IMG/VR virus record: IMGVR_UViG_3300042540_001399
Span: 1 to 64,000 of that record
Reading direction: 5' to 3' (one strand)
DNA: 64,000 bases
The position numbers and the translations under genes are program-made. Below, one piece after another: positions 1 to 15,401 of this stretch. A model generated the notes under the pieces. That model ran no database searches. It saw only the letters and a program-made list of their open reading frames with translations, and was not told the origin of the DNA. Numbering within the stretch: position 1 is the first letter of the stretch; every line of letters begins with the position of its first letter.

Positions 1-3000
1 TCAGGAACTAACGGTACTGATGGAACTTCAGGTACTAATGGAACTTCAGGTACTAATGGAACAGATGGTACTAGCGGAACAAACGGAACAGATGGTACAA
101 GCGGTACGAATGGAACTTCAGGAACAAATGGTACAGATGGAACTTCAGGAACAAATGGTACAGATGGAACTTCAGGAACAAACGGAACTTCAGGAACAAA
201 TGGTACATCAGGAACAAATGGTACTAGCGGCACAAACGGAAGTTCAGGAACAAACGGAACAAACGGAAGTTCAGGAACAAACGGAACTTCAGGAACAAAT
301 GGAACAAACGGAAGCTCAGGAACAAATGGTACTAATGGGTCAAGTGGAACAAACGGTACAAGCGGCACAGGTGGAACTTCGGGGACAAATGGGACTAGCG
401 GGACTAACGGTACAGACGGGACTAGCGGTTTATCGGGTGTAAACGGAACATCAGGTACTAATGGTACAGACGGTTCGAGCGGAACTAATGGGACTGATGG
501 GTCAAGTGGAACTAATGGGACTAGTGGAACATCAGGTACTAACGGAACTTCAGGAACGAATGGAACTTCAGGAAGTAATGGTACTGATGGTACAAGTGGT
601 ACTGATGGTACTGATGGATCTTCAGGAACAAATGGTACAAGCGGTACGAATGGAACAGATGGGACAAGCGGAACTAATGGTACGGACGGGTCAAGTGGAA
701 CTAATGGTACGGACGGTACTAATGGAACAGATGGAACCTCAGGAACTAATGGTACTGATGGAACAAGTGGTACTGATGGTACTGATGGATCTTCAGGAAC
801 AGATGGGACAAGCGGAACTAATGGTACTGACGGCACTTCAGGTACAAACGGAACAGATGGGACAAGTGGAACTAATGGTACGGACGGTACATCAGGTACA
901 AACGGTACAGATGGAACTTCAGGTACTGACGGAACTAGCGGTACGAATGGAACGGATGGTACAAGCGGAACAGATGGTACAAGCGGTACGAATGGTACTG
1001 ACGGAACTAGCGGAACAAATGGTACGGACGGAACTAGCGGAACAAATGGTACGGACGGCACTTCAGGGACTAACGGTACTGATGGCACAAATGGAACAGA
1101 TGGATCTTCAGGTACAAATGGTACTGACGGAACAAGTGGTACTAATGGAACTGATGGATCTTCAGGAACAGATGGTACTAGTGGTTTATCTGGTGTAAAT
1201 GGTACATCAGGAACTAACGGGACATCAGGTACAAACGGTACTGATGGAACTTCAGGAACTAATGGTACTAGCGGCACAAATGGGACTGATGGTACTTCAG
1301 GAACTAATGGTACGGACGGTACAAGTGGAACAGATGGAACTTCAGGAACGGATGGGTCAAGTGGTACAGATGGAACAAGTGGGTCTTCAGGAACAAATGG
1401 AACGGACGGAACTTCAGGAACAAATGGAACTAACGGAACAGATGGTACTAGCGGAACAAATGGAACAGATGGTACTAGCGGAACAAATGGTACAGATGGT
1501 ACTAGCGGAACTAACGGAAGTGACGGAACTTCAGGAACTAATGGTACTAACGGCTCAAGTGGAACTGATGGTACAAATGGTTCTTCAGGTACAAATGGAA
1601 CGGATGGTTCTAGCGGTACAGATGGTTCAAGTGGTACTAATGGTACTGACGGTAGTAGCGGAACTGATGGAACTTCAGGTACCGATGGTACGAATGGATC
1701 AAGCGGAACAGATGGAACTAGTGGAACAGACGGAACAAATGGTTCAAGTGGTACTAATGGGACTTCAGGTACAGATGGGACTAATGGGACAGACGGAACC
1801 TCAGGAACTGACGGAACAAATGGTTCAAGCGGAACAGACGGGACTAGCGGTACTAATGGTACTAATGGTAGTTCAGGTACAGATGGTACTAGCGGAACAA
1901 ACGGTACTGATGGGACTTCAGGTACAGATGGTACTAATGGAACTTCAGGTACAGATGGTACTAGCGGTACTGACGGAACTAACGGGACAGATGGAACTAG
2001 CGGAACTAACGGAACAGATGGTACTAGCGGGACAGATGGAACTTCAGGTACGAATGGTACAGATGGAACTAGTGGAACAGATGGTACAAACGGAACTAGT
2101 GGAACAGATGGAACAAACGGAACTAGTGGAACAGATGGAACAAGTGGAACTAATGGTACTAATGGAACCTCAGGAACTAATGGTACGGATGGTACAAGCG
2201 GGACTAATGGGACTAACGGAACGGATGGAACTAGCGGTACCAATGGTACAAATGGTAGTTCAGGCACTAACGGAACTTCAGGAACAAATGGAACAGATGG
2301 TACTAGTGGAACTAATGGTACGGATGGAACTAGCGGTACTAACGGAACAAATGGTTCGAGTGGAACAAATGGTACAGATGGTACTAGCGGGACAGATGGT
2401 ACTAGCGGAACTGATGGAACAAATGGTTCTTCAGGTACTAATGGTACTAACGGATCAAGCGGAACTGATGGAACAAGTGGAACTAATGGTACAGATGGAA
2501 CTTCAGGTACAAATGGTACAGACGGGTCTTCAGGAACAAACGGAACTAATGGTACTAGTGGAACTAATGGTACAGACGGAACTAGCGGAACAGATGGTAC
2601 TTCAGGGACTAATGGTACTGATGGGTCAAGTGGAACTAACGGAACTTCGGGTACAAATGGAACAGATGGAACTTCAGGAACAAATGGAACAAGTGGGACA
2701 GATGGTACTAATGGTACTGACGGTAGTAGCGGAACTAATGGAACTGACGGAACATCAGGCACCAACGGTACAGATGGTTCAAGTGGTACTGATGGGACAA
2801 GTGGTTTGTCTGGTGTAAATGGAACATCAGGGACAAATGGAACTAACGGTACTAATGGGACTTCGGGAACTAACGGTACAGATGGTTCAAGTGGTACTAA
2901 TGGTACGGACGGTACTAGCGGAACTAATGGAACAGATGGAACGAGCGGAACTGATGGTACAAATGGAACGAGCGGAACTAATGGTACAAATGGAACGGAT

Positions 3001-6000
3001 GGTACTAGCGGCACAAATGGAACAGACGGAACGAGCGGAACTGATGGTACAAATGGATCAAGTGGTACAAACGGAACAGATGGTTCAAGTGGTACTAATG
3101 GTACGGACGGAACTTCAGGTACAAATGGGACTGATGGTACAAGTGGTACTAACGGAACAAATGGTACGGATGGTACTAGTGGAACTGATGGTACTTCAGG
3201 AACTAACGGAACAAACGGTTCAAGTGGTACAGATGGTACTAGCGGTTCAAATGGAACTAACGGTACTAATGGTACAAGTGGAACAAATGGTACCAACGGA
3301 ACTAGCGGAACAAATGGTACCAATGGTTCTTCAGGTACTAATGGAACTAATGGTACTTCAGGAACTAACGGTACAAATGGGACTTCAGGCACTAACGGAA
3401 CAAACGGATCATCAGGCACAAACGGTACTAATGGAACTTCAGGAACTGACGGTACGTCGGGAACTAATGGTTCAAGTGGTACCAACGGTACTAGCGGAAC
3501 TAATGGGACATCAGGTACGAATGGTACGAATGGTACTAGCGGAACTAATGGAACGTCAGGTACCAACGGAACATCAGGAACTAATGGTACGAATGGCACT
3601 AGCGGTACGAACGGAACTAATGGAACTTCAGGAACCAATGGTACGAATGGAACTAACGGTACAAATGGGACTTCGGGAACTAATGGTACAAATGGAACTT
3701 CAGGGACTAACGGTACCAATGGGACTTCAGGAACAAATGGAACCAACGGTACAAGCGGAACTGATGGAACTTCGGGTACAAATGGTACAAACGGTACTTC
3801 AGGTACTAATGGAACATCGGGAACAAACGGAACTTCCGGTACGAATGGAACAAATGGCTCAAGCGGCACTAATGGAACATCAGGTACAAACGGAACGGAC
3901 GGAACTTCAGGAACAAATGGAACTAGCGGAACCAATGGAACTTCGGGCACTAATGGAACAAATGGATCAAGTGGTACGAATGGAACTTCAGGAACGAATG
4001 GTACCAATGGAACATCAGGTACTAATGGGACTTCTGGTACAAACGGAACAAATGGTTCAAGTGGGACTAACGGTACATCAGGTACGAATGGAACTTCTGG
4101 CACTAATGGTACGAATGGGTCTAGCGGAACAAATGGAACTTCAGGTACAAACGGAACGAATGGTACAAACGGAACATCAGGTACGAACGGAACTAGTGGA
4201 ACAAACGGGACTAATGGTACTAGCGGAACAAATGGTACAAACGGAACATCAGGAACCAATGGAACCAATGGTACAAACGGAACTTCAGGTACAAATGGAA
4301 CCAATGGAACATCGGGCACTAACGGTACTTCAGGTACTAACGGTACGAATGGAACATCAGGTACTAACGGAACTAATGGTACTTCAGGTACGAATGGCAC
4401 AAGCGGAACCAATGGTACAAACGGAACAAATGGAACTTCGGGCACAAATGGATCAAGTGGTACGAATGGAACTTCAGGAACTAATGGTACTAACGGTACA
4501 AGTGGAACCAATGGTACAAACGGAACATCAGGTACGAATGGAACTTCAGGTACCAACGGAACAAATGGAACATCAGGAACGAATGGTACTTCGGGAACTA
4601 ACGGGACAAATGGTACGTCGGGCACAAATGGTACCGATGGGACTTCAGGTACAAATGGAACCAATGGTACTAGCGGGACTAATGGAACAAACGGGACTAG
4701 CGGGACCAATGGAACAAACGGGACTTCAGGTACGAACGGAACCAATGGATCAAGTGGGACAAACGGAACATCAGGTACTAACGGTACCAACGGAACATCA
4801 GGAACTAACGGGACAAATGGAACGTCAGGTACTAATGGGACATCTGGCACTAATGGTACTTCAGGAACCAACGGGACTAGTGGTACGAACGGAACAAATG
4901 GTTCAAGTGGAACTAATGGAACATCAGGCACCAACGGGACTTCAGGTACTAATGGTACTAACGGAACTTCGGGAACTAATGGGACTAGCGGTACTAACGG
5001 AACTAATGGAACTTCAGGTACAAATGGAACTTCGGGTACTAATGGGACAAGTGGTACAAATGGAACTAATGGTACATCAGGAACCAATGGCACTTCGGGA
5101 ACTAACGGTACATCAGGTACGAATGGAACAAATGGTAGTAGCGGAACAAACGGAACATCAGGAACTAACGGTACTAATGGGTCTTCGGGAACAAATGGTA
5201 CGAGTGGAACTAATGGTACTAGCGGAACTAATGGTACAAATGGTACGAGTGGAACTAATGGAACATCAGGGACTAATGGAACCAACGGAACCAATGGATC
5301 AAGTGGGACAAACGGAACATCAGGTACTAACGGTACCAACGGAACATCAGGAACTAACGGGACAAATGGAACGTCAGGTACTAATGGAACTAGCGGCACA
5401 AATGGAACTAGCGGCACAAATGGAACAAACGGTTCAAGTGGTACTAACGGGACAAATGGAACCTCAGGTACTAACGGCACAAACGGCACATCAGGAACCA
5501 ACGGTACTAGCGGCACAAATGGAACAAACGGAACTAGTGGAACAAACGGAACTTCAGGTACTAATGGTACAAATGGAACTAGCGGTACTAACGGAACTTC
5601 AGGTACTAATGGAACATCAGGTACTAACGGAACAAACGGAACTTCAGGTACGAATGGAACTTCGGGTACTAATGGAACAAATGGTTCAAGTGGAACTAAC
5701 GGTACTAGCGGAACGAATGGAACTAGTGGTACTAACGGTACAAATGGTACTAGTGGAACAAATGGGACATCAGGAACTAATGGTACGAACGGCACATCAG
5801 GTACCAATGGTACAAATGGAACATCAGGTACAAACGGAACTAGCGGTACGAATGGAACCAATGGAACTAATGGTACAAATGGGACTTCAGGAACTAACGG
5901 TACTAATGGTACGTCGGGTACAAATGGAACAAATGGAACTTCAGGTACCAACGGAACCAATGGATCAAGTGGTACAAACGGAACGTCAGGCACAAATGGT

Positions 6001-9000
6001 ACGAACGGTACAAATGGAACTTCAGGAACCAATGGAACTTCGGGCACAAACGGAACTAGTGGAACAAACGGAACTTCAGGTACAAATGGAACGAATGGAA
6101 CCTCAGGAACAAATGGTACTAACGGCACATCAGGAACAAACGGTACATCAGGTACAAATGGAACTAATGGCACATCAGGGACAAATGGTACTAACGGAAC
6201 TAGTGGAACAAACGGCACAAATGGTTCAAGTGGAACCAACGGTACTAATGGAACCTCAGGAACTAATGGTACGTCAGGAACTAATGGTACAAACGGATCA
6301 AGTGGAACAAACGGTACATCAGGAACTAACGGAACAAATGGTACATCGGGTACTAACGGCACAAACGGAACGTCAGGAACAAATGGTACTTCAGGCACTA
6401 ACGGAACCAATGGAACAAACGGAACTTCAGGTACGAATGGAACAAACGGTACTAGCGGAACTAATGGTACTTCAGGTACTAATGGAACTTCGGGAACGAA
6501 CGGAACAAATGGTACTAGCGGAACAAATGGTACTTCAGGTACAAATGGAACTAGTGGGACTAACGGTACTAATGGGACTTCAGGAACAAACGGAACTAAT
6601 GGTACATCAGGTACGAATGGAACTAGCGGAACAAACGGAACTTCAGGAACAAATGGAACCAATGGAACATCAGGGACTAATGGTACAAACGGCACTTCAG
6701 GTACTAATGGAACAAATGGAACCTCAGGGACTAATGGTACAAACGGCACTTCAGGTACTAATGGAACATCAGGAACAAATGGTACAAATGGAACTTCGGG
6801 GACAAACGGTACTTCAGGAACTAATGGTACAAACGGTACTTCGGGCACGAATGGAACCAGCGGAACAAATGGTACATCAGGAACTAACGGGACTAGCGGA
6901 ACTAATGGAACATCAGGTACAAATGGTACAAACGGATCTTCAGGGACTAACGGAACGAATGGAACCTCAGGAACTAACGGAACGAATGGAACCTCAGGAA
7001 CTAACGGAACAAATGGTACATCGGGTACGAATGGAACTAATGGTACATCGGGTACGAATGGAACAAATGGAACATCAGGTACTAATGGAACTTCAGGAAC
7101 AAACGGTACTAACGGAACTTCAGGTACAAACGGTACAAATGGGACTTCAGGTACAAACGGAACTAGCGGAACAAATGGAACAAATGGAACCTCAGGGACT
7201 AATGGAACTAGTGGGACAAACGGAACATCGGGTACAAACGGGACTAGTGGAACGAATGGTACTTCAGGGACAAATGGAACAAATGGATCAAGTGGTACAA
7301 ACGGAACATCCGGTACTAATGGAACAAACGGTACTTCAGGAACAAACGGTACTAACGGAACTTCAGGTACAAACGGTACAAATGGGACTTCAGGTACAAA
7401 CGGAACTAGCGGAACAAATGGAACAAATGGAACCTCAGGGACTAATGGAACTAGTGGTGTTAGTGGTTTAAATGGTACAAACGGAACTTCAGGAACCAAT
7501 GGGACTAATGGAACATCGGGTACTAGAGGTACTTCAGGTACTAATGGGACAAATGGTTCTTCAGGAACTAGTGGAGGTGGAGGTGGAGGCGCAATTTCTA
7601 TTTATGACGAAGGAATTTTAGTTCAATCAAGTGCCACAAGTTTAAATTTTGTCGGTGTGTGTACTACAGCATCATCAGGCACAAGCGGATCAGTCACAGT
7701 AAATATTGGTTGTGGATGTGAATACGAATATATTAATATAGCGTCAAACTCAGGTTATTTAGAATTAGACAAACCAACCGATTTTACTAAAATATGGATT
7801 GGTAATAAATTGGGTGGTTGGAATTGTTGTCCTTGGGATTATTTTGAACCAGGGGTTAATGGTAATTTGTCAAGAACAAGATATCCTTATTATGGTGTGC
7901 CATTACCAACATCTTTATATCCAGGAGATGTTGTTAGAATTTGTGGTTCAATAACACAAATAAATCAGGGTGGTAATCCATGTTTAACTTATGATGATAT
8001 AAGAGTTGGAGTGTCTTATATCAGTTGTTCTGATTCTAGTGCAATTATATTTGCAAATACATTGATACCGGCTACTGATCTTATTTTAAATGGTAATGGT
8101 ACGGCTTGTTTTAATTTAGAAGTTGGTATAGACGTTACCCTACCGGCTTGTGATACTATGTTAACAGTTAATATTTCAACAACACAAGAAAGTGAATGTG
8201 ATAGAACTTTACACTTCAGTTATACGCTTAACGCCGATAGATATTGTCCAACTTTTGATCCAACCCCAAATCTTGTAGCACAAAATTGTTGTGATCCTTT
8301 GATCAAAGAAGTAATTCCAAAAGGTACATTACAAGTCGGTGATTTTTATGCCGATAGTGAAGGAAACTGTTGGGAAATTTTACAAAAAACGGGTGATGCT
8401 CCTGACTATACAAGAATAGTTTCCGCGACTTATAATTCATGTTCGGCTTGTATAACAGCAAATCCATGTCCTCAAAATATAGTGTTTGAATCTTGTTGTG
8501 AACAGGCCCCTGAAACATTTACAGGTTCATTACCTGGTATTAATGTAGGTGATGTGTTTGTTGATACTTATGGATTCTGTTGGAGCGCAACATCATTGAC
8601 TGTATCACCAGTTTCTGGTATCGTATATGTTGACACTAATTATGGAAACGTAGATTGTTTGAATTGTTTAACAGGTAACCCATGTCCTAATGTTTTTGAA
8701 TTACAACCTTGTTGTAAGTTTTTGGGAGGTCCTTTCTTTGTAACTGCAGCATCTTTAGGATACACACCAGTTGTAGGTGAAGTATTTGTTGATACATGGG
8801 GTAATTGTTGGACAGTTTCGAAAGATCAAGCGACAGGTCAAAATGTGACCGCTCCGTGGATTGTTCATGATACAAGTTACACAAGTTGTGAGTTGTGTTT
8901 AGCTTCCAACCCATGTCAAGATGACACAATAATTTATGCCACAGTAAGAAATTGTTGTTCAGGTGACGTTGAAGTTGTTGCGGTACCTATGGTTTATTTA

Positions 9001-9372
9001 ACTGGTTTAGAAACCACGATATCTTTCAGTCAACCAGGAACACCTAATGTTTATGAGTGTTGGGAAGTTTTAGGTTGGGAATTAGTTGACACGCCAACGA
9101 TAACTTTCTATGCGTTAGGTGGGTTCTACATCGATTGTGTAAGATGTCTAATCGCGAATCCTTGTCCTGACTTTTACGAAGCAATAGATTGTTGTGGAAC
9201 TTTACCTAACGAAGTTGTTTTAAGCAATGGACCGACAGGAAGTGTTTTTGTTGATACTTTAGGACGTTGTTGGACTGTAGGTTTAGCAGTTGCCGGTCCT
9301 GCGACAATAACATCGAGTGGTAACTATTTAGATTGTACAGAATGTATAAACGTTAATCCATGTTCAGCATAA
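1..9372 (+). CDS. Giant collagen-like (G-X-Y) fibre protein with Cys-rich C-terminal head; 5' end lies outside the window
   Basis: Frame 1 reads SGTNGTDGTS... from base 1 and is the same frame as track ORF 2806..9372, so the TTG at 2806 is internal. Repeat region to 7572, then GGGGGG, an ISIYDEG...LNFVG motif typical of phage fibre junctions, a globular region and five Cys-rich repeats; stop TAA 9370-9372. Confidence 0.85.
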   Translation, partial: SGTNGTDGTSGTNGTSGTNGTDGTSGTNGTDGTSGTNGTSGTNGTDGTSGTNGTDGTSGTNGTSGTNGTSGTNGTSGTNGSSGTNGTNGSSGTNGTSGTNGTNGSSGTNGTNGSSGTNGTSGTGGTSGTNGTSGTNGTDGTSGLSGVNGTSGTNGTDGSSGTNGTDGSSGTNGTSGTSGTNGTSGTNGTSGSNGTDGTSGTDGTDGSSGTNGTSGTNGTDGTSGTNGTDGSSGTNGTDGTNGTDGTSGTNGTDGTSGTDGTDGSSGTDGTSGTNGTDGTSGTNGTDGTSGTNGTDGTSGTNGTDGTSGTDGTSGTNGTDGTSGTDGTSGTNGTDGTSGTNGTDGTSGTNGTDGTSGTNGTDGTNGTDGSSGTNGTDGTSGTNGTDGSSGTDGTSGLSGVNGTSGTNGTSGTNGTDGTSGTNGTSGTNGTDGTSGTNGTDGTSGTDGTSGTDGSSGTDGTSGSSGTNGTDGTSGTNGTNGTDGTSGTNGTDGTSGTNGTDGTSGTNGSDGTSGTNGTNGSSGTDGTNGSSGTNGTDGSSGTDGSSGTNGTDGSSGTDGTSGTDGTNGSSGTDGTSGTDGTNGSSGTNGTSGTDGTNGTDGTSGTDGTNGSSGTDGTSGTNGTNGSSGTDGTSGTNGTDGTSGTDGTNGTSGTDGTSGTDGTNGTDGTSGTNGTDGTSGTDGTSGTNGTDGTSGTDGTNGTSGTDGTNGTSGTDGTSGTNGTNGTSGTNGTDGTSGTNGTNGTDGTSGTNGTNGSSGTNGTSGTNGTDGTSGTNGTDGTSGTNGTNGSSGTNGTDGTSGTDGTSGTDGTNGSSGTNGTNGSSGTDGTSGTNGTDGTSGTNGTDGSSGTNGTNGTSGTNGTDGTSGTDGTSGTNGTDGSSGTNGTSGTNGTDGTSGTNGTSGTDGTNGTDGSSGTNGTDGTSGTNGTDGSSGTDGTSGLSGVNGTSGTNGTNGTNGTSGTNGTDGSSGTNGTDGTSGTNGTDGTSGTDGTNGTSGTNGTNGTDGTSGTNGTDGTSGTDGTNGSSGTNGTDGSSGTNGTDGTSGTNGTDGTSGTNGTNGTDGTSGTDGTSGTNGTNGSSGTDGTSGSNGTNGTNGTSGTNGTNGTSGTNGTNGSSGTNGTNGTSGTNGTNGTSGTNGTNGSSGTNGTNGTSGTDGTSGTNGSSGTNGTSGTNGTSGTNGTNGTSGTNGTSGTNGTSGTNGTNGTSGTNGTNGTSGTNGTNGTNGTNGTSGTNGTNGTSGTNGTNGTSGTNGTNGTSGTDGTSGTNGTNGTSGTNGTSGTNGTSGTNGTNGSSGTNGTSGTNGTDGTSGTNGTSGTNGTSGTNGTNGSSGTNGTSGTNGTNGTSGTNGTSGTNGTNGSSGTNGTSGTNGTSGTNGTNGSSGTNGTSGTNGTNGTNGTSGTNGTSGTNGTNGTSGTNGTNGTSGTNGTNGTNGTSGTNGTNGTSGTNGTSGTNGTNGTSGTNGTNGTSGTNGTSGTNGTNGTNGTSGTNGSSGTNGTSGTNGTNGTSGTNGTNGTSGTNGTSGTNGTNGTSGTNGTSGTNGTNGTSGTNGTDGTSGTNGTNGTSGTNGTNGTSGTNGTNGTSGTNGTNGSSGTNGTSGTNGTNGTSGTNGTNGTSGTNGTSGTNGTSGTNGTSGTNGTNGSSGTNGTSGTNGTSGTNGTNGTSGTNGTSGTNGTNGTSGTNGTSGTNGTSGTNGTNGTSGTNGTSGTNGTSGTNGTNGSSGTNGTSGTNGTNGSSGTNGTSGTNGTSGTNGTNGTSGTNGTSGTNGTNGTNGSSGTNGTSGTNGTNGTSGTNGTNGTSGTNGTSGTNGTSGTNGTNGSSGTNGTNGTSGTNGTNGTSGTNGTSGTNGTNGTSGTNGTSGTNGTNGTSGTNGTSGTNGTSGTNGTNGTSGTNGTSGTNGTNGSSGTNGTSGTNGTSGTNGTNGTSGTNGTSGTNGTNGTSGTNGTNGTSGTNGTSGTNGTNGTNGTNGTSGTNGTNGTSGTNGTNGTSGTNGTNGSSGTNGTSGTNGTNGTNGTSGTNGTSGTNGTSGTNGTSGTNGTNGTSGTNGTNGTSGTNGTSGTNGTNGTSGTNGTNGTSGTNGTNGSSGTNGTNGTSGTNGTSGTNGTNGSSGTNGTSGTNGTNGTSGTNGTNGTSGTNGTSGTNGTNGTNGTSGTNGTNGTSGTNGTSGTNGTSGTNGTNGTSGTNGTSGTNGTSGTNGTNGTSGTNGTNGTSGTNGTSGTNGTSGTNGTNGTSGTNGTNGTSGTNGTNGTSGTNGTNGTSGTNGTSGTNGTNGTSGTNGTSGTNGTNGTSGTNGTSGTNGTSGTNGTSGTNGTSGTNGTNGSSGTNGTNGTSGTNGTNGTSGTNGTNGTSGTNGTNGTSGTNGTNGTSGTNGTSGTNGTNGTSGTNGTNGTSGTNGTSGTNGTNGTSGTNGTSGTNGTSGTNGTSGTNGTSGTNGTNGSSGTNGTSGTNGTNGTSGTNGTNGTSGTNGTNGTSGTNGTSGTNGTNGTSGTNGTSGVSGLNGTNGTSGTNGTNGTSGTRGTSGTNGTNGSSGTSGGGGGGAISIYDEGILVQSSATSLNFVGVCTTASSGTSGSVTVNIGCGCEYEYINIASNSGYLELDKPTDFTKIWIGNKLGGWNCCPWDYFEPGVNGNLSRTRYPYYGVPLPTSLYPGDVVRICGSITQINQGGNPCLTYDDIRVGVSYISCSDSSAIIFANTLIPATDLILNGNGTACFNLEVGIDVTLPACDTMLTVNISTTQESECDRTLHFSYTLNADRYCPTFDPTPNLVAQNCCDPLIKEVIPKGTLQVGDFYADSEGNCWEILQKTGDAPDYTRIVSATYNSCSACITANPCPQNIVFESCCEQAPETFTGSLPGINVGDVFVDTYGFCWSATSLTVSPVSGIVYVDTNYGNVDCLNCLTGNPCPNVFELQPCCKFLGGPFFVTAASLGYTPVVGEVFVDTWGNCWTVSKDQATGQNVTAPWIVHDTSYTSCELCLASNPCQDDTIIYATVRNCCSGDVEVVAVPMVYLTGLETTISFSQPGTPNVYECWEVLGWELVDTPTITFYALGGFYIDCVRCLIANPCPDFYEAIDCCGTLPNEVVLSNGPTGSVFVDTLGRCWTVGLAVAGPATITSSGNYLDCTECINVNPCSA
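4..7572 (+). repeat. 9-nt / 3-aa G-X-Y coding repeat (GTN, GTS, GTD, GSS), 841 triplets
   Basis: 7569 nt = 841 x 9; Gly at every third residue wherever checked; synonymous codons heavily varied. Confidence 0.95.
8272..9369 (+). repeat. Five tandem 6-cysteine modules (CC...G-x-VFVD-x-x-G-x-CW...CxxC...NPC)
   Basis: Directly visible in the translation of the fibre C-terminus; units of about 65-85 aa. Confidence 0.9.
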
Positions 9373-9400
9373 AAAAACCCCACTTTAAAGGTGGGGTTTA
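9371..9400. terminator. Intrinsic terminator between convergent genes, probably bidirectional
   Basis: AAACCCCAC-tttaaag-GTGGGGTTT hairpin with an A-run on the left (U-tract on the minus strand). Confidence 0.8.
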
Positions 9401-9404: not shown

Positions 9405-12323
9405 TTATTTTCTATTATCAAAATAAAATATTACTTCACAATACCACTCTAAAAAATGATCATTAAATAAATCCCATTTAATATCAACACCATCAACAGA
9501 ATAAACTTCATAATTATCAAAGTTAGAAAGAACATTATCCCTAAACCATTTAAATTTACATTTATTAAAATGTTCGTCATCTCTTAAATGAAATTCGGTT
9601 ACAATCTTAGGAATTGTTTTTAAAAATTCTACGTTGCTTGGTTGAAAAACATCGTATTCCCCACCTTCACAATCACATTTTAAAAAATCAATTTTGTTAA
9701 TATTTTCATTTTCTAAAAATTCTTTAAAACTAAATGTAGGAACACTTTCAGTTATTCCATCCCAACTGATTTCAATTTTCTTTTTATCAGTAATTGCTCC
9801 CTGTATAATTTTTACATTATCTTCACCAACATTTTTATGAAGAACTTCAATCTGATATGATAATGGTTCAACTACATAACATTGTTTTGGATTTTTAGGT
9901 AATATTTTATATGTAAATGGACCTAAAGATGCGCCCAAATCTACAACAATATCTCCTTCTTCAACTTCAAAGAATCTTTCATATGTATTATTTTCAAATA
10001 TTTCTTTAGTTGCTTGATTAACATACCAATCACTTTTTTTACCCCAATCGAATGAAGTTTCTTCATTTTTTTCAATCATTAATTCTTTATTTATTATTTT
10101 GTTTATTTCCAAAATGACCATTTCTGAAGTAATTTCTTTCGTACACTCAAACATCCTATCTGTGTTTTTATGTAATGGACACCAATTCCAATCACCAGCA
10201 TCCAATCTTTCCGAATTGAAACATCCGTGACAAACATTTTCATTTATGACTCTGTATGTATTTAAAGTTGTTTCCGCCCATCTTTCACTAAAACCCGATA
10301 TTAAAACAATAGGTAATTCACAAGCCCAAGCCAACCAACTAAGACCTGAACCGAGACCAATAAAAAATTCACATGTTGATAAATCATCAACTACTTCTTG
10401 TAGATTTCCCCCTTTAAATAATTTTACACCTTCAGGATAGTTGTTATTCATGTATCCGTTACCTTCCTTTGAATATATGACACATTCATAACCAAGGGAT
10501 AAAAGGTAGTTCACAACTTCTTGCCATCCATTTGTGTTGTTCCAATATTTTGCCTGAGCAGTTGAATGAAAACCAATACCAACTTTTTTTTCTTTTTTTA
10601 TTTTAGGTAATTTTAATTTTGGTCTTATTTCATTGTATTGTAAACCTAATATATCTGAAGCCGTTTTTTGTAATGGTTGTTTTTTTACATCGACTTTGTG
10701 GATATTTGAATTGATAGTCCCATCTTCATTGTAAAACCAACCTAATCTATATTGTGCGTATATGTTTTGAACAATAACACCCGGTTCGACAAATTCAATT
10801 TCTGTATATTGTTCTTTGAACAAATAGTTCATGAAGGTAGAAACGATTAGTTTACATTTGTGTTTGATTCTAAATTCTTCACAATATGGTAACCATGCTA
10901 AGGTATCCCCTAAAGATTTTGAACCGAATGATATGTAGACTCTTTTATTTTCCAAGTTAAGTAAATTACTATAAATTAGTTGTCCATTTTCTTTTACTTC
11001 GGTTTTCCAAGGTACATAATATTCCGTATTGAGTCTTACCCAATGGTTGATTGGTAATTCGTTTGAATAAATTAAATTATTTTCATCATATATTTTTATA
11101 TCAAGTTTGTTTTCAGTACTACCCAATATTTCCAAAAAAGGATTAACAACAAAATGTTGATTAAACGTGTAATCATTTTTGTGTTTTTGGTTTTGTACTT
11201 TGTCATTTTCTAAAACTCTTTTATAAAATGAATATAATTGTTCCCCAAAATCTTGTTGGGTTTCTATTTCATATGAAGATTCTTTTTCAATTAAACTTAA
11301 TAATTGTTCTGATATTTTTTTATAATCATCATTTTCAATACTTGTGATGTATCTGTCGAACATCCCCATGTACTGAGGTAGGTTTCTGGTCAATATTTTC
11401 ATTCCGTAGTTGATTGCTTCTCTTACAACCAAAGGATTACATTCCCATGTTGAATTGAACATCAAAACATCACATGACTCCATGAATTTATCAACGTCAT
11501 TTCTTTCACCCCATACCGTAACATTTGAAGGTAAGTTTTCCATTATTGGTTTCCAATAAGATTCAAAATTGGGGGCTTGGTTTCCTATGAAGTGAAAATG
11601 TAAATCGGGATTAGTATGTTCCAATAATTTTGCAACTTCGATACCTTCTTTTTGATTTTTTCCTTCGGTCCAAAGACCAACATTAAGAATGTGTGTTTTC
11701 ATTGGGTCCAACCCAAGATTTTCTCTTTCTGTTATTTTTTTCAAAAGAGGTATTTTATGATGTTCATAATAGATTTGTAATTCTTCTAAAATAGGTTTGA
11801 CTTTGTTTTCATATGGGTACAAATGAAGTTCTTTAAGTGATCTTTCAGATTCAAAAGTGGTAAAATGAAAAGGACTAACGAATGAATATGCGTCAGGATG
11901 AAATTTTTTATTATTTGGGTTAAACCAAACATTGTGACACGTTTCAACAATATTCCAAGATCGTTGATTATCATAAAGTTCGTTCAAAATGTCCAATGTA
12001 ATTTTATTAAAACTTTCAAAGGCTTCGGGTATTTCTTCTGAATGAATGATATCTATTTTTAAATCCTTAATTATTTTTAAAAGTTCTTTTTTTCTACTTG
12101 ATTCTGTTGTTGATCCCAAAGTAAAAAAATGACCTACATCTAATAAATCAATGATTTTGTTTCTTTGTACGATATATGTGTCACTAAATTGAGAATATTC
12201 TACTAAAAAAATATCAAGTTTATCTTTGTATTTCAGAAGTGATTCAATTCTTTTTAGGACAAACTGTGGCATACCACCAGTTGATAAATGTGGCGTTAGA
12301 TATAGTATTTTAATTTTTTGCAT
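9405..12323 (-). CDS. Three-domain enzyme: GT4-type glycosyltransferase + TibC/Aah-like protein O-heptosyltransferase + FkbM-family methyltransferase
   Basis: N-term HLSTGG and E-CNPLVVR-E (GT4 EX7E); middle SKSLGDTLAWLPY, FFIGLGSGLSWLAW and CHGC...WCP...FECT iron-finger as in TibC/Aah; C-term VVDLGASLG, VEP, IDFLKCDCEGGE (FkbM). Confidence 0.8.
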   Translation of the reverse strand: MQKIKILYLTPHLSTGGMPQFVLKRIESLLKYKDKLDIFLVEYSQFSDTYIVQRNKIIDLLDVGHFFTLGSTTESSRKKELLKIIKDLKIDIIHSEEIPEAFESFNKITLDILNELYDNQRSWNIVETCHNVWFNPNNKKFHPDAYSFVSPFHFTTFESERSLKELHLYPYENKVKPILEELQIYYEHHKIPLLKKITERENLGLDPMKTHILNVGLWTEGKNQKEGIEVAKLLEHTNPDLHFHFIGNQAPNFESYWKPIMENLPSNVTVWGERNDVDKFMESCDVLMFNSTWECNPLVVREAINYGMKILTRNLPQYMGMFDRYITSIENDDYKKISEQLLSLIEKESSYEIETQQDFGEQLYSFYKRVLENDKVQNQKHKNDYTFNQHFVVNPFLEILGSTENKLDIKIYDENNLIYSNELPINHWVRLNTEYYVPWKTEVKENGQLIYSNLLNLENKRVYISFGSKSLGDTLAWLPYCEEFRIKHKCKLIVSTFMNYLFKEQYTEIEFVEPGVIVQNIYAQYRLGWFYNEDGTINSNIHKVDVKKQPLQKTASDILGLQYNEIRPKLKLPKIKKEKKVGIGFHSTAQAKYWNNTNGWQEVVNYLLSLGYECVIYSKEGNGYMNNNYPEGVKLFKGGNLQEVVDDLSTCEFFIGLGSGLSWLAWACELPIVLISGFSERWAETTLNTYRVINENVCHGCFNSERLDAGDWNWCPLHKNTDRMFECTKEITSEMVILEINKIINKELMIEKNEETSFDWGKKSDWYVNQATKEIFENNTYERFFEVEEGDIVVDLGASLGPFTYKILPKNPKQCYVVEPLSYQIEVLHKNVGEDNVKIIQGAITDKKKIEISWDGITESVPTFSFKEFLENENINKIDFLKCDCEGGEYDVFQPSNVEFLKTIPKIVTEFHLRDDEHFNKCKFKWFRDNVLSNFDNYEVYSVDGVDIKWDLFNDHFLEWYCEVIFYFDNRK

Positions 12324-12379: not shown

Positions 12380-13381
12380 ATGCCAAACTCAGTTAAATAT
12401 TCAACAACAGGGGATACTCGATCAATAAAAAAAGGAAATTTGTATTTTGGTGTTGGTGACGTTCCAAAAGGACCAAGTACCAACACATCTTATTTTAATG
12501 GTATTACACCTGTTACTGGTGGTTATACTGTATATAGGTACGAGCCAACACAAAGTAGTAAACTTGCTTTTTATACTAATCAAACAGGAACTGATCTTGT
12601 AAATTATACAAATAATTTTTTAGGACAAAACTTTTCAACATCAACACAATGTGTGAATTGGTTCAACACACAAACGAATTATGTTTGTGTAAATAAAGAC
12701 TATGACCCAATAATTACTTCAGGACTGACTCTATGTTTAGACGCGTCTTTCACCCCATCATATTCTACTTCTGGAAATTCTTGGTATGATTTATCATATA
12801 ATTCATTTACAACAACTTTAGTTAATGGACCAACATTTGATTCGGGAAATGGCGGATCAATACAGTTTGATGGAACCGACGATCAATGTGTAGTTACGTC
12901 AAATGGGTTTGGTACGTTCAATAATCAGAAATATACAATCGAGGCTTGGGTTAATTTTGCAAGTAATAGTGGGGATATTCCAATTTTTAGTTATGATTAT
13001 TCAAGTTTTAACAACCCATATTATTCTGCTCACCTTAGAAACACGGGTACGGGACAAATATTTTTAGGTTGGAACATGTCGGGATTTTATTACAATATAC
13101 AAACTACATCGACTGTGATTTTTCCCAATACTTGGTATTATGTTGTTGGTATTGTTGAAAGTGGAAGACAACAAATTTATGTTAATAGTAACTTGTGGGC
13201 TAGTGGGACTATATCAGGAACAATAACATTTTATAACACTCCTGTTTATGTTGGGTATTTTCCAAATGCACCTTTAGTCATGAATGGAAAAATTGCCGTG
13301 GTTAGAGTTTATAATAGAGCATTTTCTTCTTCAGAAGTAAGTCAAAATTGGAATGCACAAAAAACAAGATTCGGATATTAA
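12380..13381 (+). CDS. LamG/concanavalin A-like lectin domain virion protein
   Basis: LCLDAS..SY..SGNSWYDLS, FDGTDD, YTIEAWV, WYYVVG, GKIAVVRVYNRA, NWNAQKTRFG pattern of phage LamG proteins. Confidence 0.75.
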   Translation: MPNSVKYSTTGDTRSIKKGNLYFGVGDVPKGPSTNTSYFNGITPVTGGYTVYRYEPTQSSKLAFYTNQTGTDLVNYTNNFLGQNFSTSTQCVNWFNTQTNYVCVNKDYDPIITSGLTLCLDASFTPSYSTSGNSWYDLSYNSFTTTLVNGPTFDSGNGGSIQFDGTDDQCVVTSNGFGTFNNQKYTIEAWVNFASNSGDIPIFSYDYSSFNNPYYSAHLRNTGTGQIFLGWNMSGFYYNIQTTSTVIFPNTWYYVVGIVESGRQQIYVNSNLWASGTISGTITFYNTPVYVGYFPNAPLVMNGKIAVVRVYNRAFSSSEVSQNWNAQKTRFGY

Positions 13382-13422
13382 GGAATTAAATTTTGAAACA
13401 TAATATTTATTTAAAAAAAGTT

Positions 13423-14415
13423 ATGTCAACATCTAGACCTTTTTCATATAATACTGGCTCAACAATAAATGGTACAATACAAGTTGGAAGTTTGGCGGTA
13501 GGATTCCCAACCGTAGGATTTGATTCTACTGGTTTAGAATGGTGGAATGGTCCTGATGAAGATTTAGGTTATGTTATTGCACAACCCGTACCAAATGATA
13601 GTCAACCAACACCTGTGCTTGGACAAACCGCTTCTGTTGGTTTTTTTAGAACCAACGGTTTTGATGATAATGAATTTTTAGACATAACAAATATTTTGTT
13701 AGGAACAAATTATATAGATCCATTTTTAGCATCCTCTGCACTTACAGTAAATGGATTTTGGAATTCTTATCCTAATCCAGTTTTATATTTAGACGCTGGT
13801 GACCCTGCTAGTTATTCAGGAAGTGGTTCCGTTTGGATTGATACAATAGGAGGTAAAACTTTCAACTTAGTTAATGGACCATCTTACGGTCCTGGTTTTG
13901 GTGGAATTCTTAACTTCAACGCGTCAAGTGGTCAATACGCCCAATGTAACACGAGTTTACCAAATTTGAGTAATTGGACGGTTTCTGTTTGGAATTATTA
14001 TGATGGTACAAACGTCGGAGGAGCACCTTGTATTGTTACTGAAATTTATCCGGGTACTACAAGCAACATAAATTATTCAATTGGTGTGAATAATAGTGGA
14101 TTTAACGCCGGGTTTTTCAATGGGGCTTGGAGAGAAAGTGGAACCTATTCATTAAGTCCAAATAATTGGTATTTTATTGTTGGCACATATGATGGTAACA
14201 CATTGAAACTATATATTAATAATACTTTAGTTGGTACAGGAAATTACACTGGTACTCCTATATCATCTCAAGGAGGAATAAGGTTGATGAGAAGATGGGA
14301 TCTTCCCGATTATTGGGGCGGACTGTTAGGTACTGTTGGTATATATGACTTTGCACTCAATTCAGGACAAATATCTGCAATATGGAATACAACTAAATCA
14401 AGGTTTGGTTTGTAA
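13423..14415 (+). CDS. LamG/concanavalin A-like lectin domain virion protein
   Basis: LYLDAGDPASYSGSGSVW, WYFIVGTYDG..LKLYIN, IYDFALNS..WNTTKSRFGL. ATG 13423 after the TATTTAT motif is preferred to the track start at 13393. Confidence 0.75.
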   Translation: MSTSRPFSYNTGSTINGTIQVGSLAVGFPTVGFDSTGLEWWNGPDEDLGYVIAQPVPNDSQPTPVLGQTASVGFFRTNGFDDNEFLDITNILLGTNYIDPFLASSALTVNGFWNSYPNPVLYLDAGDPASYSGSGSVWIDTIGGKTFNLVNGPSYGPGFGGILNFNASSGQYAQCNTSLPNLSNWTVSVWNYYDGTNVGGAPCIVTEIYPGTTSNINYSIGVNNSGFNAGFFNGAWRESGTYSLSPNNWYFIVGTYDGNTLKLYINNTLVGTGNYTGTPISSQGGIRLMRRWDLPDYWGGLLGTVGIYDFALNSGQISAIWNTTKSRFGL

Positions 14416-14468: not shown

Positions 14469-15401
14469 ATGAAAGAAATTTGTATTGATGTTACAGGTTG
14501 TCGTGCTTTGGGCGACACTTTATGTGCAACACCTGTGGTTAAAAAAATAAGTAATACTTATAATAAAAAAGTTTCGGTAGTTTCTCACCACCCAAAATTA
14601 TTTACTAACTTATCATACGTTGAAAACAGTTTTGAATACAACCCAAAATTGTTTGATGATTTGAAAAAAGATTACGATATCTTTCCAACTTTTGATGTGT
14701 CATACAAAGACAATGGAATTTGTAACAAGCACAACTCTATGGATATAAGACAACTACACGCAATAAACTTAGGATTTATGTTGACTAAAGAAGAATCTTC
14801 TTTGGATTATGTACCAGATGCTTGTATCTTACCCATTTTACCAAAAAAATACGTTTTAATCCACCCCGTTCAAAATTGGAATTCAAGGACATGGCCGGCC
14901 AAAAATTGGCAAATATTAACAAAACTTTTAAATGAAAAAGGAATTTACGTTGTATCTGTTGGAAAAGATTCTTCTGAATTAGGTGGGTCTAATGTAGATA
15001 AACCCGTTTTCAATTTTGAAATAGAACTTGGATTAAATCTTATGAACAAAACAACTTTGGATGAAACATGGTATCTGTTAAATGGTTGTTCTTGTTTTGT
15101 AACTATGGACTCTGGACTATTACATTTAGCCGGTACAACAGATTGTGAAATACTACAACTTGGTAGCTCAATAGATCCTGAATTCAGAGCACCATATAGA
15201 CATGGTTCACAAGAATATAAGTATCATTATGTTAGAGGGGGTTGTGGTTTACATTGTGCTTCTGATATGAAGTATGGCGTTAGAGAATGGGGATCGATAC
15301 AAGGAATACCATCTTTAGTTAATTGTTTAGAAAGAAAAAAAACTTTTGAGTGTCATCCTTCTGTTTTACAGATTTATCAAAAAATCTTAGAAATAATATA
15401 A
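14469..15401 (+). CDS. GT9 (heptosyltransferase-like) glycosyltransferase
   Basis: ALGDTLCATP, YVLIHP...SRTWP..NW, FVTMDSGLLHLAG; C-terminal four-Cys cluster. Confidence 0.8.
   Translation: MKEICIDVTGCRALGDTLCATPVVKKISNTYNKKVSVVSHHPKLFTNLSYVENSFEYNPKLFDDLKKDYDIFPTFDVSYKDNGICNKHNSMDIRQLHAINLGFMLTKEESSLDYVPDACILPILPKKYVLIHPVQNWNSRTWPAKNWQILTKLLNEKGIYVVSVGKDSSELGGSNVDKPVFNFEIELGLNLMNKTTLDETWYLLNGCSCFVTMDSGLLHLAGTTDCEILQLGSSIDPEFRAPYRHGSQEYKYHYVRGGCGLHCASDMKYGVREWGSIQGIPSLVNCLERKKTFECHPSVLQIYQKILEII

What the first reader, a model, noticed from the sequence alone, without database searches (positions are those of the whole stretch)
4..7572. At least 841 G-X-Y triplets with no proline, built from hundreds of N-G-T/S sequons
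Seen: Gly-Thr-(Asn/Ser/Asp) almost exclusively, with the start still outside the window. Every GTN followed by GT or GS creates an N-X-S/T sequon. Known: type I collagen has about 338 triplets at roughly 0.29 nm per residue, which would make this fibre about 0.7 micrometre or longer if triple-helical. Thr glycosylation can stabilise imino-acid-poor collagens. Inference: either a glycan-stabilised ultra-long tether or a polyglycine-II bundle whose regular Thr face could bind ice or surfaces. No HMW1C/GT41-type N-glycosyltransferase is recognisable in this window, so the sequons may be incidental.
Basis: partly seen in the sequence, partly recalled or inferred. Interest (0 to 1): 0.75.

Follow-up and report, generated by a model that had tools for sequence, protein, structure and literature searches.

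The report
Giant sugar-coated collagen-like phage fibre
A lake-water jumbo phage encodes a 3,394-residue fibre protein with 904 unbroken, proline-free Gly-Thr-(Asn/Ser/Asp) triplets (about 0.78 µm if triple-helical), and the gene next to it encodes a TibC-type protein O-glycosyltransferase that recurs beside such arrays in many other phages, which points to a previously undescribed way of building and stabilising very long collagen-like fibres.

Summary
Bases 4-7590 encode 843 uninterrupted G-X-Y triplets with no Pro and 415 N-X-S/T sequons. The contig was cut inside the gene. Closing its two ends gives a 10,185-nt gene: an 89-aa N-domain, 904 triplets and a 593-aa Cys-rich C-domain. This gene is identical to one lying inside a second IMG/VR contig. 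A third contig has 877 triplets.

The host genome is a 291-kb freshwater myovirus-type jumbo phage, not a giant virus. Synonymous sites in the array are scrambled, so it is an old repeat maintained at the protein level.

No GT41 gene exists in the genome, and Asn at Y is not conserved in relatives, so the sequons look incidental. The hydroxyl residue at X is conserved.

The convergent neighbour gene is a GT4 + Aah/TibC-family O-heptosyltransferase + FkbM methyltransferase fusion (TIGR04414, 281 bits; PDB TibC E 9e-64; catalytic Asp and iron-finger Cys conserved). This enzyme travels with G-[TS]-x arrays whatever the end domains:
- all 5 tip-related loci with such arrays;
- 10 of 11 close enzyme loci with full flanks;
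- the cultured Microcystis phage Mel-JY01.

Best reading: a trimeric, O-glycosylated collagen-like virion fibre. Neither the triple helix nor the glycosylation is shown directly.

The parts
1..7590 (+). Collagen-like array, window part (frame of base 4): 843 of the gene's 904 G-X-Y triplets. Bases 1-137 repeat the other end of the contig. The gene start (ATG, 89-aa N-domain, first 75 triplets) lies at G000 289938-290887 = L002 9938-10887.
7591..8256 (+). Jelly-roll beta-sandwich domain directly after the array (C-domain residues 1-222). Best fold matches are trimeric TNF/C1q-type ligands, BclB/ExsF-type exosporium C-domains and phage fibre knobs.
   Evidence: TM < 0.5, Z 8-9.4: suggestive only
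8257..9372 (+). Five Cys-rich modules of about 70 aa each (CC...G.FVD..G.CW...Y..C..C...NPCP), followed by the stop codon. Presumed distal or receptor-binding tip. A rare, viral-only family.
9375..9399 (.). Bidirectional terminator-like hairpin between the convergent fibre gene and glycosyltransferase gene.
   Evidence: 2 found, 0.1 expected
9405..12323 (-). 972-aa fusion enzyme: GT4-like Glycos_transf_1 (residues 196-361), Aah/TibC-family O-heptosyltransferase domain (residues 399-743) and FkbM methyltransferase (residues 792-916).
10092..11090 (-). The TibC-like domain itself. Conserved: catalytic Asp (residue 472), Thr587, Lys591, Trp662 and the four iron-finger Cys (697, 700, 714, 726). 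The positions of TibC Arg286 and Pro300 are Val and Gly.
12380..14415 (+). Two tandem Laminin_G_3 (ConA-like) proteins with similarity to PHROG virion structural proteins. They are part of the block that is missing in the array-less relative L024.
14469..15401 (+). GT9 glycosyltransferase, closest to LPS heptosyltransferase II (WaaF). Candidate chain-extending enzyme.
15949..17196 (+). PF11397 'GlcNAc' glycosyltransferase (PHROG 24687). Also present in relative L024, which has no array, so it is not specifically tied to the array.
18200..19879 (+). HtrL/YibB-like domain protein. This is the end of the glycosylation-type gene block.

Best explanation
The gene encodes a virion fibre of a freshwater jumbo myophage. 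Three 3,394-residue chains are proposed to trimerise at the jelly-roll domain that follows the array. They would then zip up into a collagen-type triple helix of 904 triplets, about 0.78 µm long.

The 89-residue N-domain would anchor the fibre on the particle. The distal Cys-rich modules would bind the host surface.

The array has no Pro, no Lys or Glu, and no Thr at Y, so it lacks every known triple-helix stabiliser. I propose instead that its roughly 1,200 Thr/Ser hydroxyls per chain are O-glycosylated in the infected cell. The enzyme would be the Aah/TibC-type domain of the neighbouring fusion gene. The glycan would be extended by the fused GT4 domain and the nearby GT9, and capped by the FkbM methyltransferase. 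The glycan coat would stabilise, solubilise and protect the very long, flexible fibre, which widens the phage's capture radius or reaches through host mucilage.

Shown: the gene, its length, its end domains, the enzyme's family membership, and the genomic coupling of enzyme and array.
Inferred: virion location, trimer and triple helix, glycosylation and its acceptor sites, the donor sugar, and the biological role.
For: Gene and length:
-. Three assemblies give 904, 904 and 877 triplets.

Protein-level selection:
- Between repeat blocks, codon positions 1/2 are 0.79/0.80 identical but position 3 only 0.37.
- 61% of identical residues use different codons.
- The 2 SNPs between assemblies are synonymous.

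Phage fibre context:
- Tail sheath, baseplate, PolB and DnaB genes in the window.
- The N-domain is 46% and 42% identical to N-termini of fibre proteins of huge phage LR756502 and of Tunturi_5 gp29, annotated 'tail fiber protein'.
- The same N-domain heads 20 proteins of 522-1446 aa, two of them with YadA-head repeats.
- The tip domain is swapped among fibres with different shafts.
- A jelly-roll domain directly follows the array, as in BclA/C1q-type collagens.

Enzyme:
- TIGR04414 at 281 bits against a cut-off of 200.
- PDB TibC E 9e-64.
- Catalytic Asp, 3 of 4 sugar-binding residues and all 4 iron-finger Cys are conserved in five phage homologues.

Coupling of enzyme and array:
- The enzyme gene lies directly downstream and convergent in all 5 tip-related loci that have G-[TS]-[SND] arrays. 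It is absent from that position in all 33 others (one, L030, has a partial GT4-type hit about 5 kb away). The 5 loci sit at 4 separate places on the tip tree.
- Contigs that are 82-96% complete and carry G-x-Q/T arrays or no array lack the enzyme.
- 10 of 11 close enzyme loci with full flanks carry an array, with many different N- and C-domains.
- 14 of 49 further fragmentary array-bearing contigs encode the enzyme, against at least 551 loci in 2.9 million contigs overall.
- The cultured Mel-JY01 has the same pairing.
Against: - There is no direct evidence of a triple helix.
- From memory of the host-guest propensity scales (Persikov et al. 2000), Thr at X and Asn at Y are both among the less stabilising residues. 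Stabilisation by glycosyl-Thr is documented only for Thr at Y.
- Jelly-roll matches have TM < 0.5 and Z only 8-9.4, within the tool's 'common arrangement' zone.
- The 'tail fiber' label of the N-domain relative rests on that protein's collagen-type PHROG hits, not on the N-domain. Head or neck fibres are equally possible.
- The enzyme's Arg286 equivalent is Val/Thr in all phage homologues, and the phage encodes no ADP-heptose pathway, so the donor sugar is unknown.
- Known BAHT substrates are beta-helical autotransporters, not G-X-Y repeats.
- The coupling is looser for distant enzyme homologues (7 of 25), and many array contigs show no enzyme, though they are fragments.
Confidence: 0.55

Rival explanations
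1. Glycosylated but not triple-helical. The array would be a mucin-like, intrinsically extended bottle-brush tether, held out by dense O-glycans. Trimerisation, if any, would occur only at the end domains.
For: The array has no Pro, no charge pairs and no Thr at Y. Hydroxyl residues are very dense and a protein O-glycosyltransferase is adjacent.
Against: A mucin-like brush does not need Gly at every third residue. Here Gly periodicity is unbroken for 904 triplets and is kept under purifying selection while synonymous sites are scrambled. Related arrays of 566, 677 and 573 triplets are also uninterrupted.
Confidence: 0.2
2. Unmodified fibre. The neighbouring glycosyltransferase block would act on something else (host LPS or capsule, or other virion proteins), and the linkage with arrays would reflect co-inheritance.
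For: Jumbo-phage GT clusters have been read as surface-polysaccharide modifiers (PMC7824862). The PF11397 and HtrL genes persist in relative L024 without an array. Distant enzyme homologues often lack a nearby array.
Against: The TibC-like gene specifically tracks G-[TS]-x arrays across different N-domains, tips and tip-tree positions. It belongs to a family known only as protein O-glycosyltransferases.
Confidence: 0.18
3. The N-G-T/S sequons are functional N-glycosylation sites that stabilise the helix.
For: There are 415-438 sequons. Asn at Y is frequent in the closest enzyme-linked arrays (L070, L072, L074).
Against: There is no GT41 in the genome. Asn is replaced by Ser in L034, L085, L083 and Mel-JY01 arrays that keep the same enzyme. 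The acidic residue at -2 that PglB-type sequons need is lacking here, because position -2 is always Gly (the PglB requirement is from my own knowledge).
Confidence: 0.04
4. Polyglycine-II bundle with a flat Thr face that binds ice or surfaces.
For: The only support is the G-x-x periodicity and the abundance of Thr.
Against: Gly is 33.6%, with essentially no extra Gly or Ala for lateral packing. There are no turn motifs in 2,712 residues. Fibre-type N- and C-domains flank the array. No fold prediction could be run.
Confidence: 0.02
5. The length is an assembly artefact.
For: The contig breaks inside the array. One assembly is 243 nt shorter, at a 125-nt exact repeat. Many related contigs end at such arrays.
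Against: An identical 10,185-nt gene is found in two assemblies. All 127-mers are unique. Piecewise exact matches occur at flank-like depth in 4 runs. Other phages carry arrays of 566-810 triplets.
Confidence: 0.02

Closest known systems
BclA/BclB-type exosporium glycoproteins of Bacillus (collagen-like region plus C-terminal TNF/C1q-like trimer)
   Same: The architecture is the same: N-terminal anchor, collagen-like shaft, then a jelly-roll domain. AFDB matches include BclB C-domain and 'Exosporium protein C' entries. In BclA, Thr in the repeats carries O-glycans (cited in PMC11923368). From my own knowledge, BclA filament length scales with the number of triplets.
   Different: From my own knowledge, BclA has tens of triplets, not 904. 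It is Pro-rich (GPT) with Thr at Y, whereas here there is no Pro and Thr is at X. Different glycosyltransferases are involved. Here five extra Cys-rich modules follow the jelly-roll. Fold similarity is only TM < 0.5.
TibC/AAH with TibA/AIDA-I (bacterial autotransporter heptosyltransferases, PMC4358343)
   Same: The enzyme domain passes the TIGR04414 cut-off and matches PDB 4RB4 at E 9e-64. The catalytic Asp and the iron-finger Cys are conserved. The enzyme gene lies next to the gene of a highly repetitive adhesin-like substrate with many hydroxyl acceptors. Both would act in the cytoplasm.
   Different: The presumed substrate is a G-X-Y array, not a beta-helix. The enzyme is fused to GT4 and FkbM domains. 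The Arg286 equivalent is lost. It is phage-encoded. Neither the donor sugar nor the dodecameric state is known.
Collagen-like phage tail fibres (E. coli O157 prophage EPclA-D, PMC3368898; PHROG 'collagen like minor tail'; Tunturi_5 gp29)
   Same: These are trimeric fibre proteins of tailed phages with G-X-Y segments. The N-domain is shared with Tunturi_5 gp29.
   Different: Those have short, interrupted, Pro-containing or charged segments. None is reported with hundreds of Pro-free G-T-x triplets or with a dedicated protein glycosyltransferase.
Riftia cuticle collagen and the (Gly-Pro-Thr(Gal))10 peptide
   Same: They set the precedent that glycosyl-Thr can replace Hyp as a triple-helix stabiliser.
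   Different: There Thr is at Y and Pro at X. Here Thr is at X and there is no Pro.
Snow-flea antifreeze protein and phage gp38 polyglycine-II sandwiches (from my own knowledge)
   Same: They share the G-x-x periodicity.
   Different: Those have more than 40% Gly, small residues at the other positions, and short helices joined by turns. None of this applies here.

Membership tests
Collagen triple-helix repeat proteins | Gly at every third residue over long runs; match to Pfam PF01391 | tested here: met
   904 uninterrupted triplets. PF01391 E 2.3e-60.
Collagen triple-helix repeat proteins | Known stabilisers present: Pro/Hyp, K-E/K-D charge pairs, or Thr at Yaa | tested here: not met
   0 Pro, 0 Lys, 0 Glu and 1 Arg. 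Thr is at Xaa only. The list of stabilisers comes from PMC11923368.
Collagen triple-helix repeat proteins | Adjacent trimerisation or nucleation domain | tested here: inconclusive
   A jelly-roll domain follows the array. Its best matches are TNF/C1q-type trimers and phage knobs, but with TM 0.3-0.45 and Z 8-9.4.
Collagen triple-helix repeat proteins | Forms a homotrimeric triple helix | not testable with these tools
Aah/TibC bacterial autotransporter heptosyltransferases (BAHT) | Sequence membership above the curated threshold | tested here: met
   TIGR04414 at 281.4 bits against a cut-off of 200, covering profile positions 24-374 of 374. PDB TibC E 9e-64. LPS heptosyltransferase I only E 4e-4.
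Aah/TibC bacterial autotransporter heptosyltransferases (BAHT) | Catalytic base Asp110 and iron-finger Cys339/342/358/370 | tested here: met
   All are conserved in the window enzyme and in 4 phage homologues.
Aah/TibC bacterial autotransporter heptosyltransferases (BAHT) | Four heptose-binding residues: Thr226, Lys230, Arg286, Trp305 | tested here: not met
   Thr, Lys and Trp are conserved. Arg286 is Val (window) or Thr (relatives). The donor sugar may therefore differ.
Aah/TibC bacterial autotransporter heptosyltransferases (BAHT) | Heptosylates Ser of a beta-helical autotransporter; dodecameric ring | not testable with these tools
   No autotransporter is present. The presumed substrate is the G-X-Y array, by genomic linkage only.
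HMW1C/GT41 N-glycosylation system | A GT41 enzyme in the genome | tested here: not met
   PF13844 is absent from all 290,887 bases, while the positive controls were detected.
Phage tail fibre / receptor-binding protein | Conserved N-terminal virion-attachment domain with exchangeable distal parts | tested here: met
   The N-domain is shared with fibre-like proteins of other large phages that have different distal parts. The tip domain is shared with 38 loci that have different shafts.
Phage tail fibre / receptor-binding protein | Present in virions, attached to the tail | not testable with these tools
   There are no proteomic or EM data. No paper on Mel-JY01 is in the library.
Polyglycine-II bundle antifreeze-type proteins | Very high Gly/Ala content and short helices joined by turns | tested here: not met
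   Gly is 33.6% and Ala 2 of 2,712 residues. There are no breaks in periodicity.

The most novel reading that the evidence does not exclude
Environmental tailed phages carry a widespread, undescribed protein-glycosylation system (at least 551 enzyme loci in IMG/VR). In it, Aah/TibC-type enzymes hyper-O-glycosylate Pro-free G-(Thr/Ser)-x collagen-like arrays at the X position. This would be a fourth way, besides imino acids, charge pairs and Y-position glycosyl-Thr, to stabilise a collagen triple helix. It would allow uninterrupted helices of 600-900 triplets that serve as sub-micrometre host-capture lines.
Probability: 0.4. Interest if true: 0.85.

Novelty: new variant of a known kind. Interest (0 to 1): 0.72.

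Why it matters
Collagen folding rules are built on imino acids, charge pairs and Y-position Thr. A natural, selected run of 904 triplets with none of these is a clean test case for what else can hold a triple helix together. It could also serve as a template for Pro-free recombinant collagen materials.

The result extends the Aah/TibC protein-glycosyltransferase family from bacterial autotransporter adhesins to phages and to a new substrate type. It adds virion glycosylation to the biology of freshwater jumbo phages.

It gives a concrete, culturable entry point: Microcystis phage Mel-JY01, whose collagen-like gene is unannotated in its record.

It also shows that such arrays systematically break metagenome assemblies, so these fibres are under-counted in databases.

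Tried and rejected
- Pfam and PHROGs gave nothing for the tip domain or the N-domain.
- tblastn of the tip against 50,697 phage records found no match.
- A PDB sequence search with the N-domain found nothing.
- The protein Atlas returned only unnamed viral clusters for the Cys modules.
- PHROG hits of Tunturi gp29 turned out to come from its collagen segments, so they do not define the N-domain.
- Fold searches of the jelly-roll domain, both whole and alone, stayed below TM 0.5. I therefore do not file it as a TNF/C1q family member.
- Literature searches found no description of phage TibC-like enzymes, of G-T-N fibres or of Mel-JY01.
- I looked for a phage-encoded ADP-heptose pathway (PF13580, PF01467, PF00294) and for psbA as a cyanophage marker. 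All were absent.
- Host assignment remains open.
- Rejected: giant-virus origin, functional N-sequons, PGII/ice-binding, assembly artefact. Reasons are given under the rival explanations.

Full report
**1. The observation**

The frame that begins at window base 4 is open to a stop at 9370-9372. Bases 4-7590 encode 843 consecutive G-X-Y triplets: GTN 409, GTS 260, GTD 104, GSS 55 and 15 others. There is no proline, and there are 415 N-X-S/T sequons. Pfam's Collagen model matches at E 2.3e-60. The other long ORFs listed over the array are the +1 frame of the same strand, which stays open only because of composition. It has no continuity with the flanking domains.

**2. The whole gene and its length**

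The window is bases 1-64000 of a 290,887-bp IMG/VR virus record that CheckV rates 99% complete. The only other G-X-Y run in the genome lies at the far end of the contig. There, an ATG at 289938 opens an 89-residue N-domain followed by 75 triplets that run off the end. The last 119 nt of the contig equal window 19-137.

Joining the two ends with that 137-nt overlap gives a 10,185-nt gene of 3,394 aa: 89 aa, then 904 triplets, then 593 aa. This gene is identical, base for base, to a gene lying in the interior of a second IMG/VR contig from another metagenome (L005, 274 kb). A third contig (L006, 290.7 kb) differs by two synonymous changes and lacks one 243-nt unit, giving 877 triplets. That unit is bounded by the only 125-nt exact repeat in the array.

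At the DNA level the array is degenerate. It shows 60-67% matches at periods 9 and 27, and all 127-mers are unique. Logan contigs from four lake-water runs match pieces of the array exactly, at depths of 8-22 against 12-22 for the single-copy flank. At least 19 lake or freshwater runs hold the locus. The length is therefore very unlikely to be an artefact, although no spanning long read was available.

**3. Evidence for selection on the protein**

Between random 9-codon blocks, identity is 0.79 and 0.80 at codon positions 1 and 2 but 0.37 at position 3. Of identical residues, 61% use different codons. Codon usage resembles the genome's. This is an old array kept by selection on the protein, not a recent slippage product.

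The composition has a gradient. Asp at Y occurs only in the first 450 or so triplets. The distal half is almost pure GTN/GTS.

**4. What carries it**

The window encodes a tail sheath, a baseplate wedge, PolB, DnaB, a UvsX-like protein and RNR. This is a myovirus-type jumbo phage from lake water, with about 31% GC. It is not a giant eukaryotic virus. The nearest cultured relative by sheath and by the enzyme described below is Microcystis phage Mel-JY01. psbA is absent, and the host is not established.

**5. The end domains**

*N-domain.* It is 46% identical to the N-terminus of an 893-aa fibre-like protein of huge phage LR756502. It is 42% identical to that of Tunturiibacter phage Tunturi_5 gp29, annotated 'tail fiber protein'. 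In the large protein database the same N-domain heads 20 proteins of 522-1446 aa from big phage contigs, two of them with YadA-head repeats. It therefore looks like a conserved attachment adaptor in front of exchangeable trimeric distal parts. The 'tail fiber' label itself rests on gp29's collagen-type PHROG hits, so tail versus head or neck attachment is open.

*C-domain.* It has only 85 representatives among 1.84 billion proteins. The AF2 model (pLDDT 84) shows a jelly-roll sandwich at residues about 43-222, followed by five Cys-rich modules of about 70 aa. The jelly-roll's best matches are:
- TNF-family and C1q-related trimers;
- BclB/ExsF-type exosporium C-domains;
- phage fibre knobs.
The scores are TM 0.3-0.45 and Z 8-9.4. 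That is suggestive of a trimerisation head in the BclA/C1q position, but it is not proof.

**6. Relatives of the tip**

Thirty-eight viral loci share the tip. Some have no G-X-Y at all. One group has G-x-(Gln/Thr) arrays of 265-553 triplets. Another group has G-(Thr/Ser)-(Ser/Asn/Asp) arrays: L034 with at least 810 triplets (cut by the contig end, no Pro), L022 with 346, and L036/L037.

Very long Pro-poor arrays thus recur. Asn at Y does not: L034 is almost all G-T-S. GT41 is absent from the whole genome.

**7.

Thirty-three bases after the fibre's stop, across a bidirectional terminator hairpin, a convergent 972-aa gene ends. It encodes a fusion of three domains:
- a GT4-like Glycos_transf_1 domain;
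- a domain matching NCBIfam TIGR04414, 'autotransporter strand-loop-strand O-heptosyltransferase' (Aah/TibC), at 281 bits against a cut-off of 200;
- an FkbM methyltransferase.

The middle domain matches the TibC crystal structures 4RB4/4RAP at E 9e-64 over residues 49-387 of 406. Against LPS heptosyltransferase I it reaches only E 4e-4.

Against the features defined in PMC4358343, the window enzyme and four phage homologues compare as follows:
- catalytic base Asp110: conserved;
- Thr226, Lys230, Trp305: conserved;
- all four iron-finger cysteines: conserved;
- Arg286: replaced by Val or Thr;
- Pro300: replaced by Gly or Ser.

This family is known only as cytoplasmic protein O-glycosyltransferases that hyper-glycosylate repetitive adhesins. 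Downstream follow two LamG-like proteins, a WaaF-like GT9, a PF11397 glycosyltransferase and an HtrL/YibB-like protein. Another GT lies upstream.

**8. Is the enzyme tied to the array?**

(a) *Tip-related loci.* All five loci with G-[TS]-[SND] arrays (the window, L022, L034, L036, L037) have this fusion directly downstream and convergent. None of the other 33 has it in that position. One of them, L030, has a partial GT4-type hit about 5 kb from its fibre gene. On the tip-domain tree the five loci sit in four separate places.

(b) *Loci without such arrays.* L024 is a backbone relative (peptidase 61%, PF11397 enzyme 76% identical). Its fibre has no array, and it lacks the fusion, the LamG pair and the GT9. 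Contigs that are 82-96% complete and carry G-x-Q/T arrays or no array have no such enzyme anywhere.

(c) *Starting from the enzyme.* At least 551 IMG/VR loci encode the domain.
- Of the 80 best, 33 have a G-[TS]-x array within 10 kb.
- Among those at least 58% identical with 8 kb on both sides, 10 of 11 do.
- Nine of the ten array-less loci in that identity band have contigs that end less than 1.6 kb past the domain.
- The arrays there reach 677, 566+114 and 573+161 triplets. They carry many unrelated N- and C-domains; only L072 shares the tip.

(d) *Starting from the array.* A G-T-N/G-T-S DNA pattern hits at least 118 viral stretches. Of 49 further contigs, which are fragments with low CheckV completeness, 14 encode the enzyme.

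(e) *GenBank phages.* Only 4 of 50,697 records have the domain. In Mel-JY01 it lies 1.7 kb from a + strand G-[TS]-[SRD] ORF of at least 1,016 aa. The record starts inside that ORF and annotates it as minus-strand hypothetical proteins instead.

The constant pair is therefore array plus TibC-like enzyme. Everything else is swapped. This is genomic linkage, not biochemical proof, and it loosens for distant homologues (7 of 25).

**9. Mechanism proposed**

A trimeric fibre is nucleated at the C-terminal jelly-roll. Its shaft is a collagen-type helix of 2,712 residues, about 0.78 µm at 0.286 nm per residue (an established figure). The N-adaptor anchors it on the particle and the Cys-rich modules sit at the far end.

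The array has 0 Pro, 0 Lys, 0 Glu and Thr only at Xaa. It therefore lacks all stabilisers listed in PMC11923368. The hydroxyls are proposed to be O-glycosylated by the neighbour enzyme. The glycan would be extended by the fused GT4 domain and the GT9, and methyl-capped by FkbM.

The donor sugar is open. The Arg286 equivalent is lost, and the phage has no ADP-heptose genes.

The role is inference only: a long flexible capture line in dilute lake water, or a way to reach through host mucilage.

**10. Rivals**

- A non-helical mucin-like brush does not explain strict Gly periodicity kept under selection.
- A fibre that is left unmodified, with the GT block acting on host polysaccharide, is weakened by the specific co-variation described in section 8.
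- Functional N-sequons are unlikely: there is no GT41 and Asn is not conserved.
- A PGII bundle is unlikely on composition and context.
- An assembly artefact is contradicted by the three concordant assemblies.

**11. Novelty**

Collagen-like phage fibres, BclA-type glycosylated collagens and BAHT enzymes are each known. None of the six literature searches and the one paper check found their combination. Specifically, none described:
- a phage-encoded Aah/TibC-type enzyme genetically coupled to Pro-free G-(T/S)-x arrays;
- uninterrupted arrays of 600-900 triplets.

I rate it a new variant of known kinds. It has a testable and potentially broader implication for how triple helices can be stabilised.

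Noticed in passing
L046 (PP395634.1, Microcystis phage Mel-JY01) 2-3052 +, and L056 from about 7690 to the record end: The GenBank record starts inside a + strand collagen-like ORF of at least 1,016 aa (at least 200 G-[TS]-x triplets). The record does not annotate it; two minus-strand 'hypothetical proteins' are called over it instead. An unannotated open frame of at least 771 aa runs off the other end of the record and may be the same gene's N-part.
   Followed up: partly
window 7090-7214 and 7333-7457; L006: The only 125-nt exact repeat in the array brackets a 243-nt (27-triplet) unit (7215-7457) that is missing in contig L006. This is either a real length polymorphism from unequal recombination or a local assembly collapse. 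Logan depth in the 7201-7400 bin is lower than the flank in all 4 runs.
   Followed up: partly
L058-L089 (IMG/VR loci with the TibC-like domain): Many viral contigs end within about 0.02-1.6 kb of the TibC-like gene, on the side where the array is expected. Such arrays evidently break short-read assemblies, so these fibres are truncated or missing in databases.
   Followed up: partly
window 427-444, 1183-1200, 2803-2820, 7456-7473; also G000 near 290500: The otherwise polar array is punctuated by rare hydrophobic pairs: G-[LI]-S-G-V-N four times and G-V-S-G-L-N once. These could be hinges, registration marks or docking sites. Unexplained.
   Followed up: no
window 4 to about 3500 versus 3500-7500: There is a compositional gradient. 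GTD triplets (112 Asp) are confined to the N-proximal half, which has a 27-nt N-D-S rhythm. The distal half is GTN/GTS only, so the fibre would be acidic near the particle and neutral distally.
   Followed up: partly
window 8257-9369: The tip modules carry 6 Cys per about 70 aa (42 Cys in 593 aa), including a CxxC...NPC pattern. That is unusual for a protein made in the bacterial cytoplasm. It suggests metal sites, or disulfides formed after lysis. The family has only 85 representatives among 1.84 billion proteins, all apparently viral.
   Followed up: partly
window 24766-26898 (-): A 710-aa protein has a complete Fe/Mn superoxide dismutase (N and C domains, E 1e-39) embedded at residues about 166-354. 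This is a phage-encoded SOD fusion.
   Followed up: no
window 39378-44216 and 44531-50938 (+): Two giant ORFs (1,612 and 2,135 aa) lie between the sheath and replication genes and have no Pfam or PHROG match. The tail sheath itself is unusually long at 1,107 aa.
   Followed up: no
G000 286256-289132 (L002 6256-9132) and 289134-289922: The two genes just upstream of the fibre gene are a 958-aa protein with a C-terminal papain-like peptidase (PHROG 16701) and a 262-aa protein of unknown function. Both are conserved in relative L024. They could be fibre processing or assembly factors.
   Followed up: no
window 15949-17196: The PF11397 glycosyltransferase (E 5e-70; PHROG 24687 E 1e-164) belongs, from my own knowledge, to the family of the cytoplasmic Skp1 hydroxyproline GlcNAc-transferase. 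That would make it a second protein-directed GT family in the block. It persists in L024, which has no array.
   Followed up: partly
L012, L007-L013: A sister group of fibres with the same tip has 265-553 triplets of G-x-(Gln/Thr), with Thr often at Y and no TibC-like enzyme on contigs up to 86% complete. This is a second type of long Pro-poor phage collagen, presumably stabilised differently.
   Followed up: partly
L054 (LR756501.1) and L055 (LR756504.1): Huge phages of 636-735 kb also encode the TibC-like domain. LR756501 has short G-T-S runs (19 and 10 triplets) about 5-6 kb away. LR756504 has none within 15 kb.
   Followed up: partly
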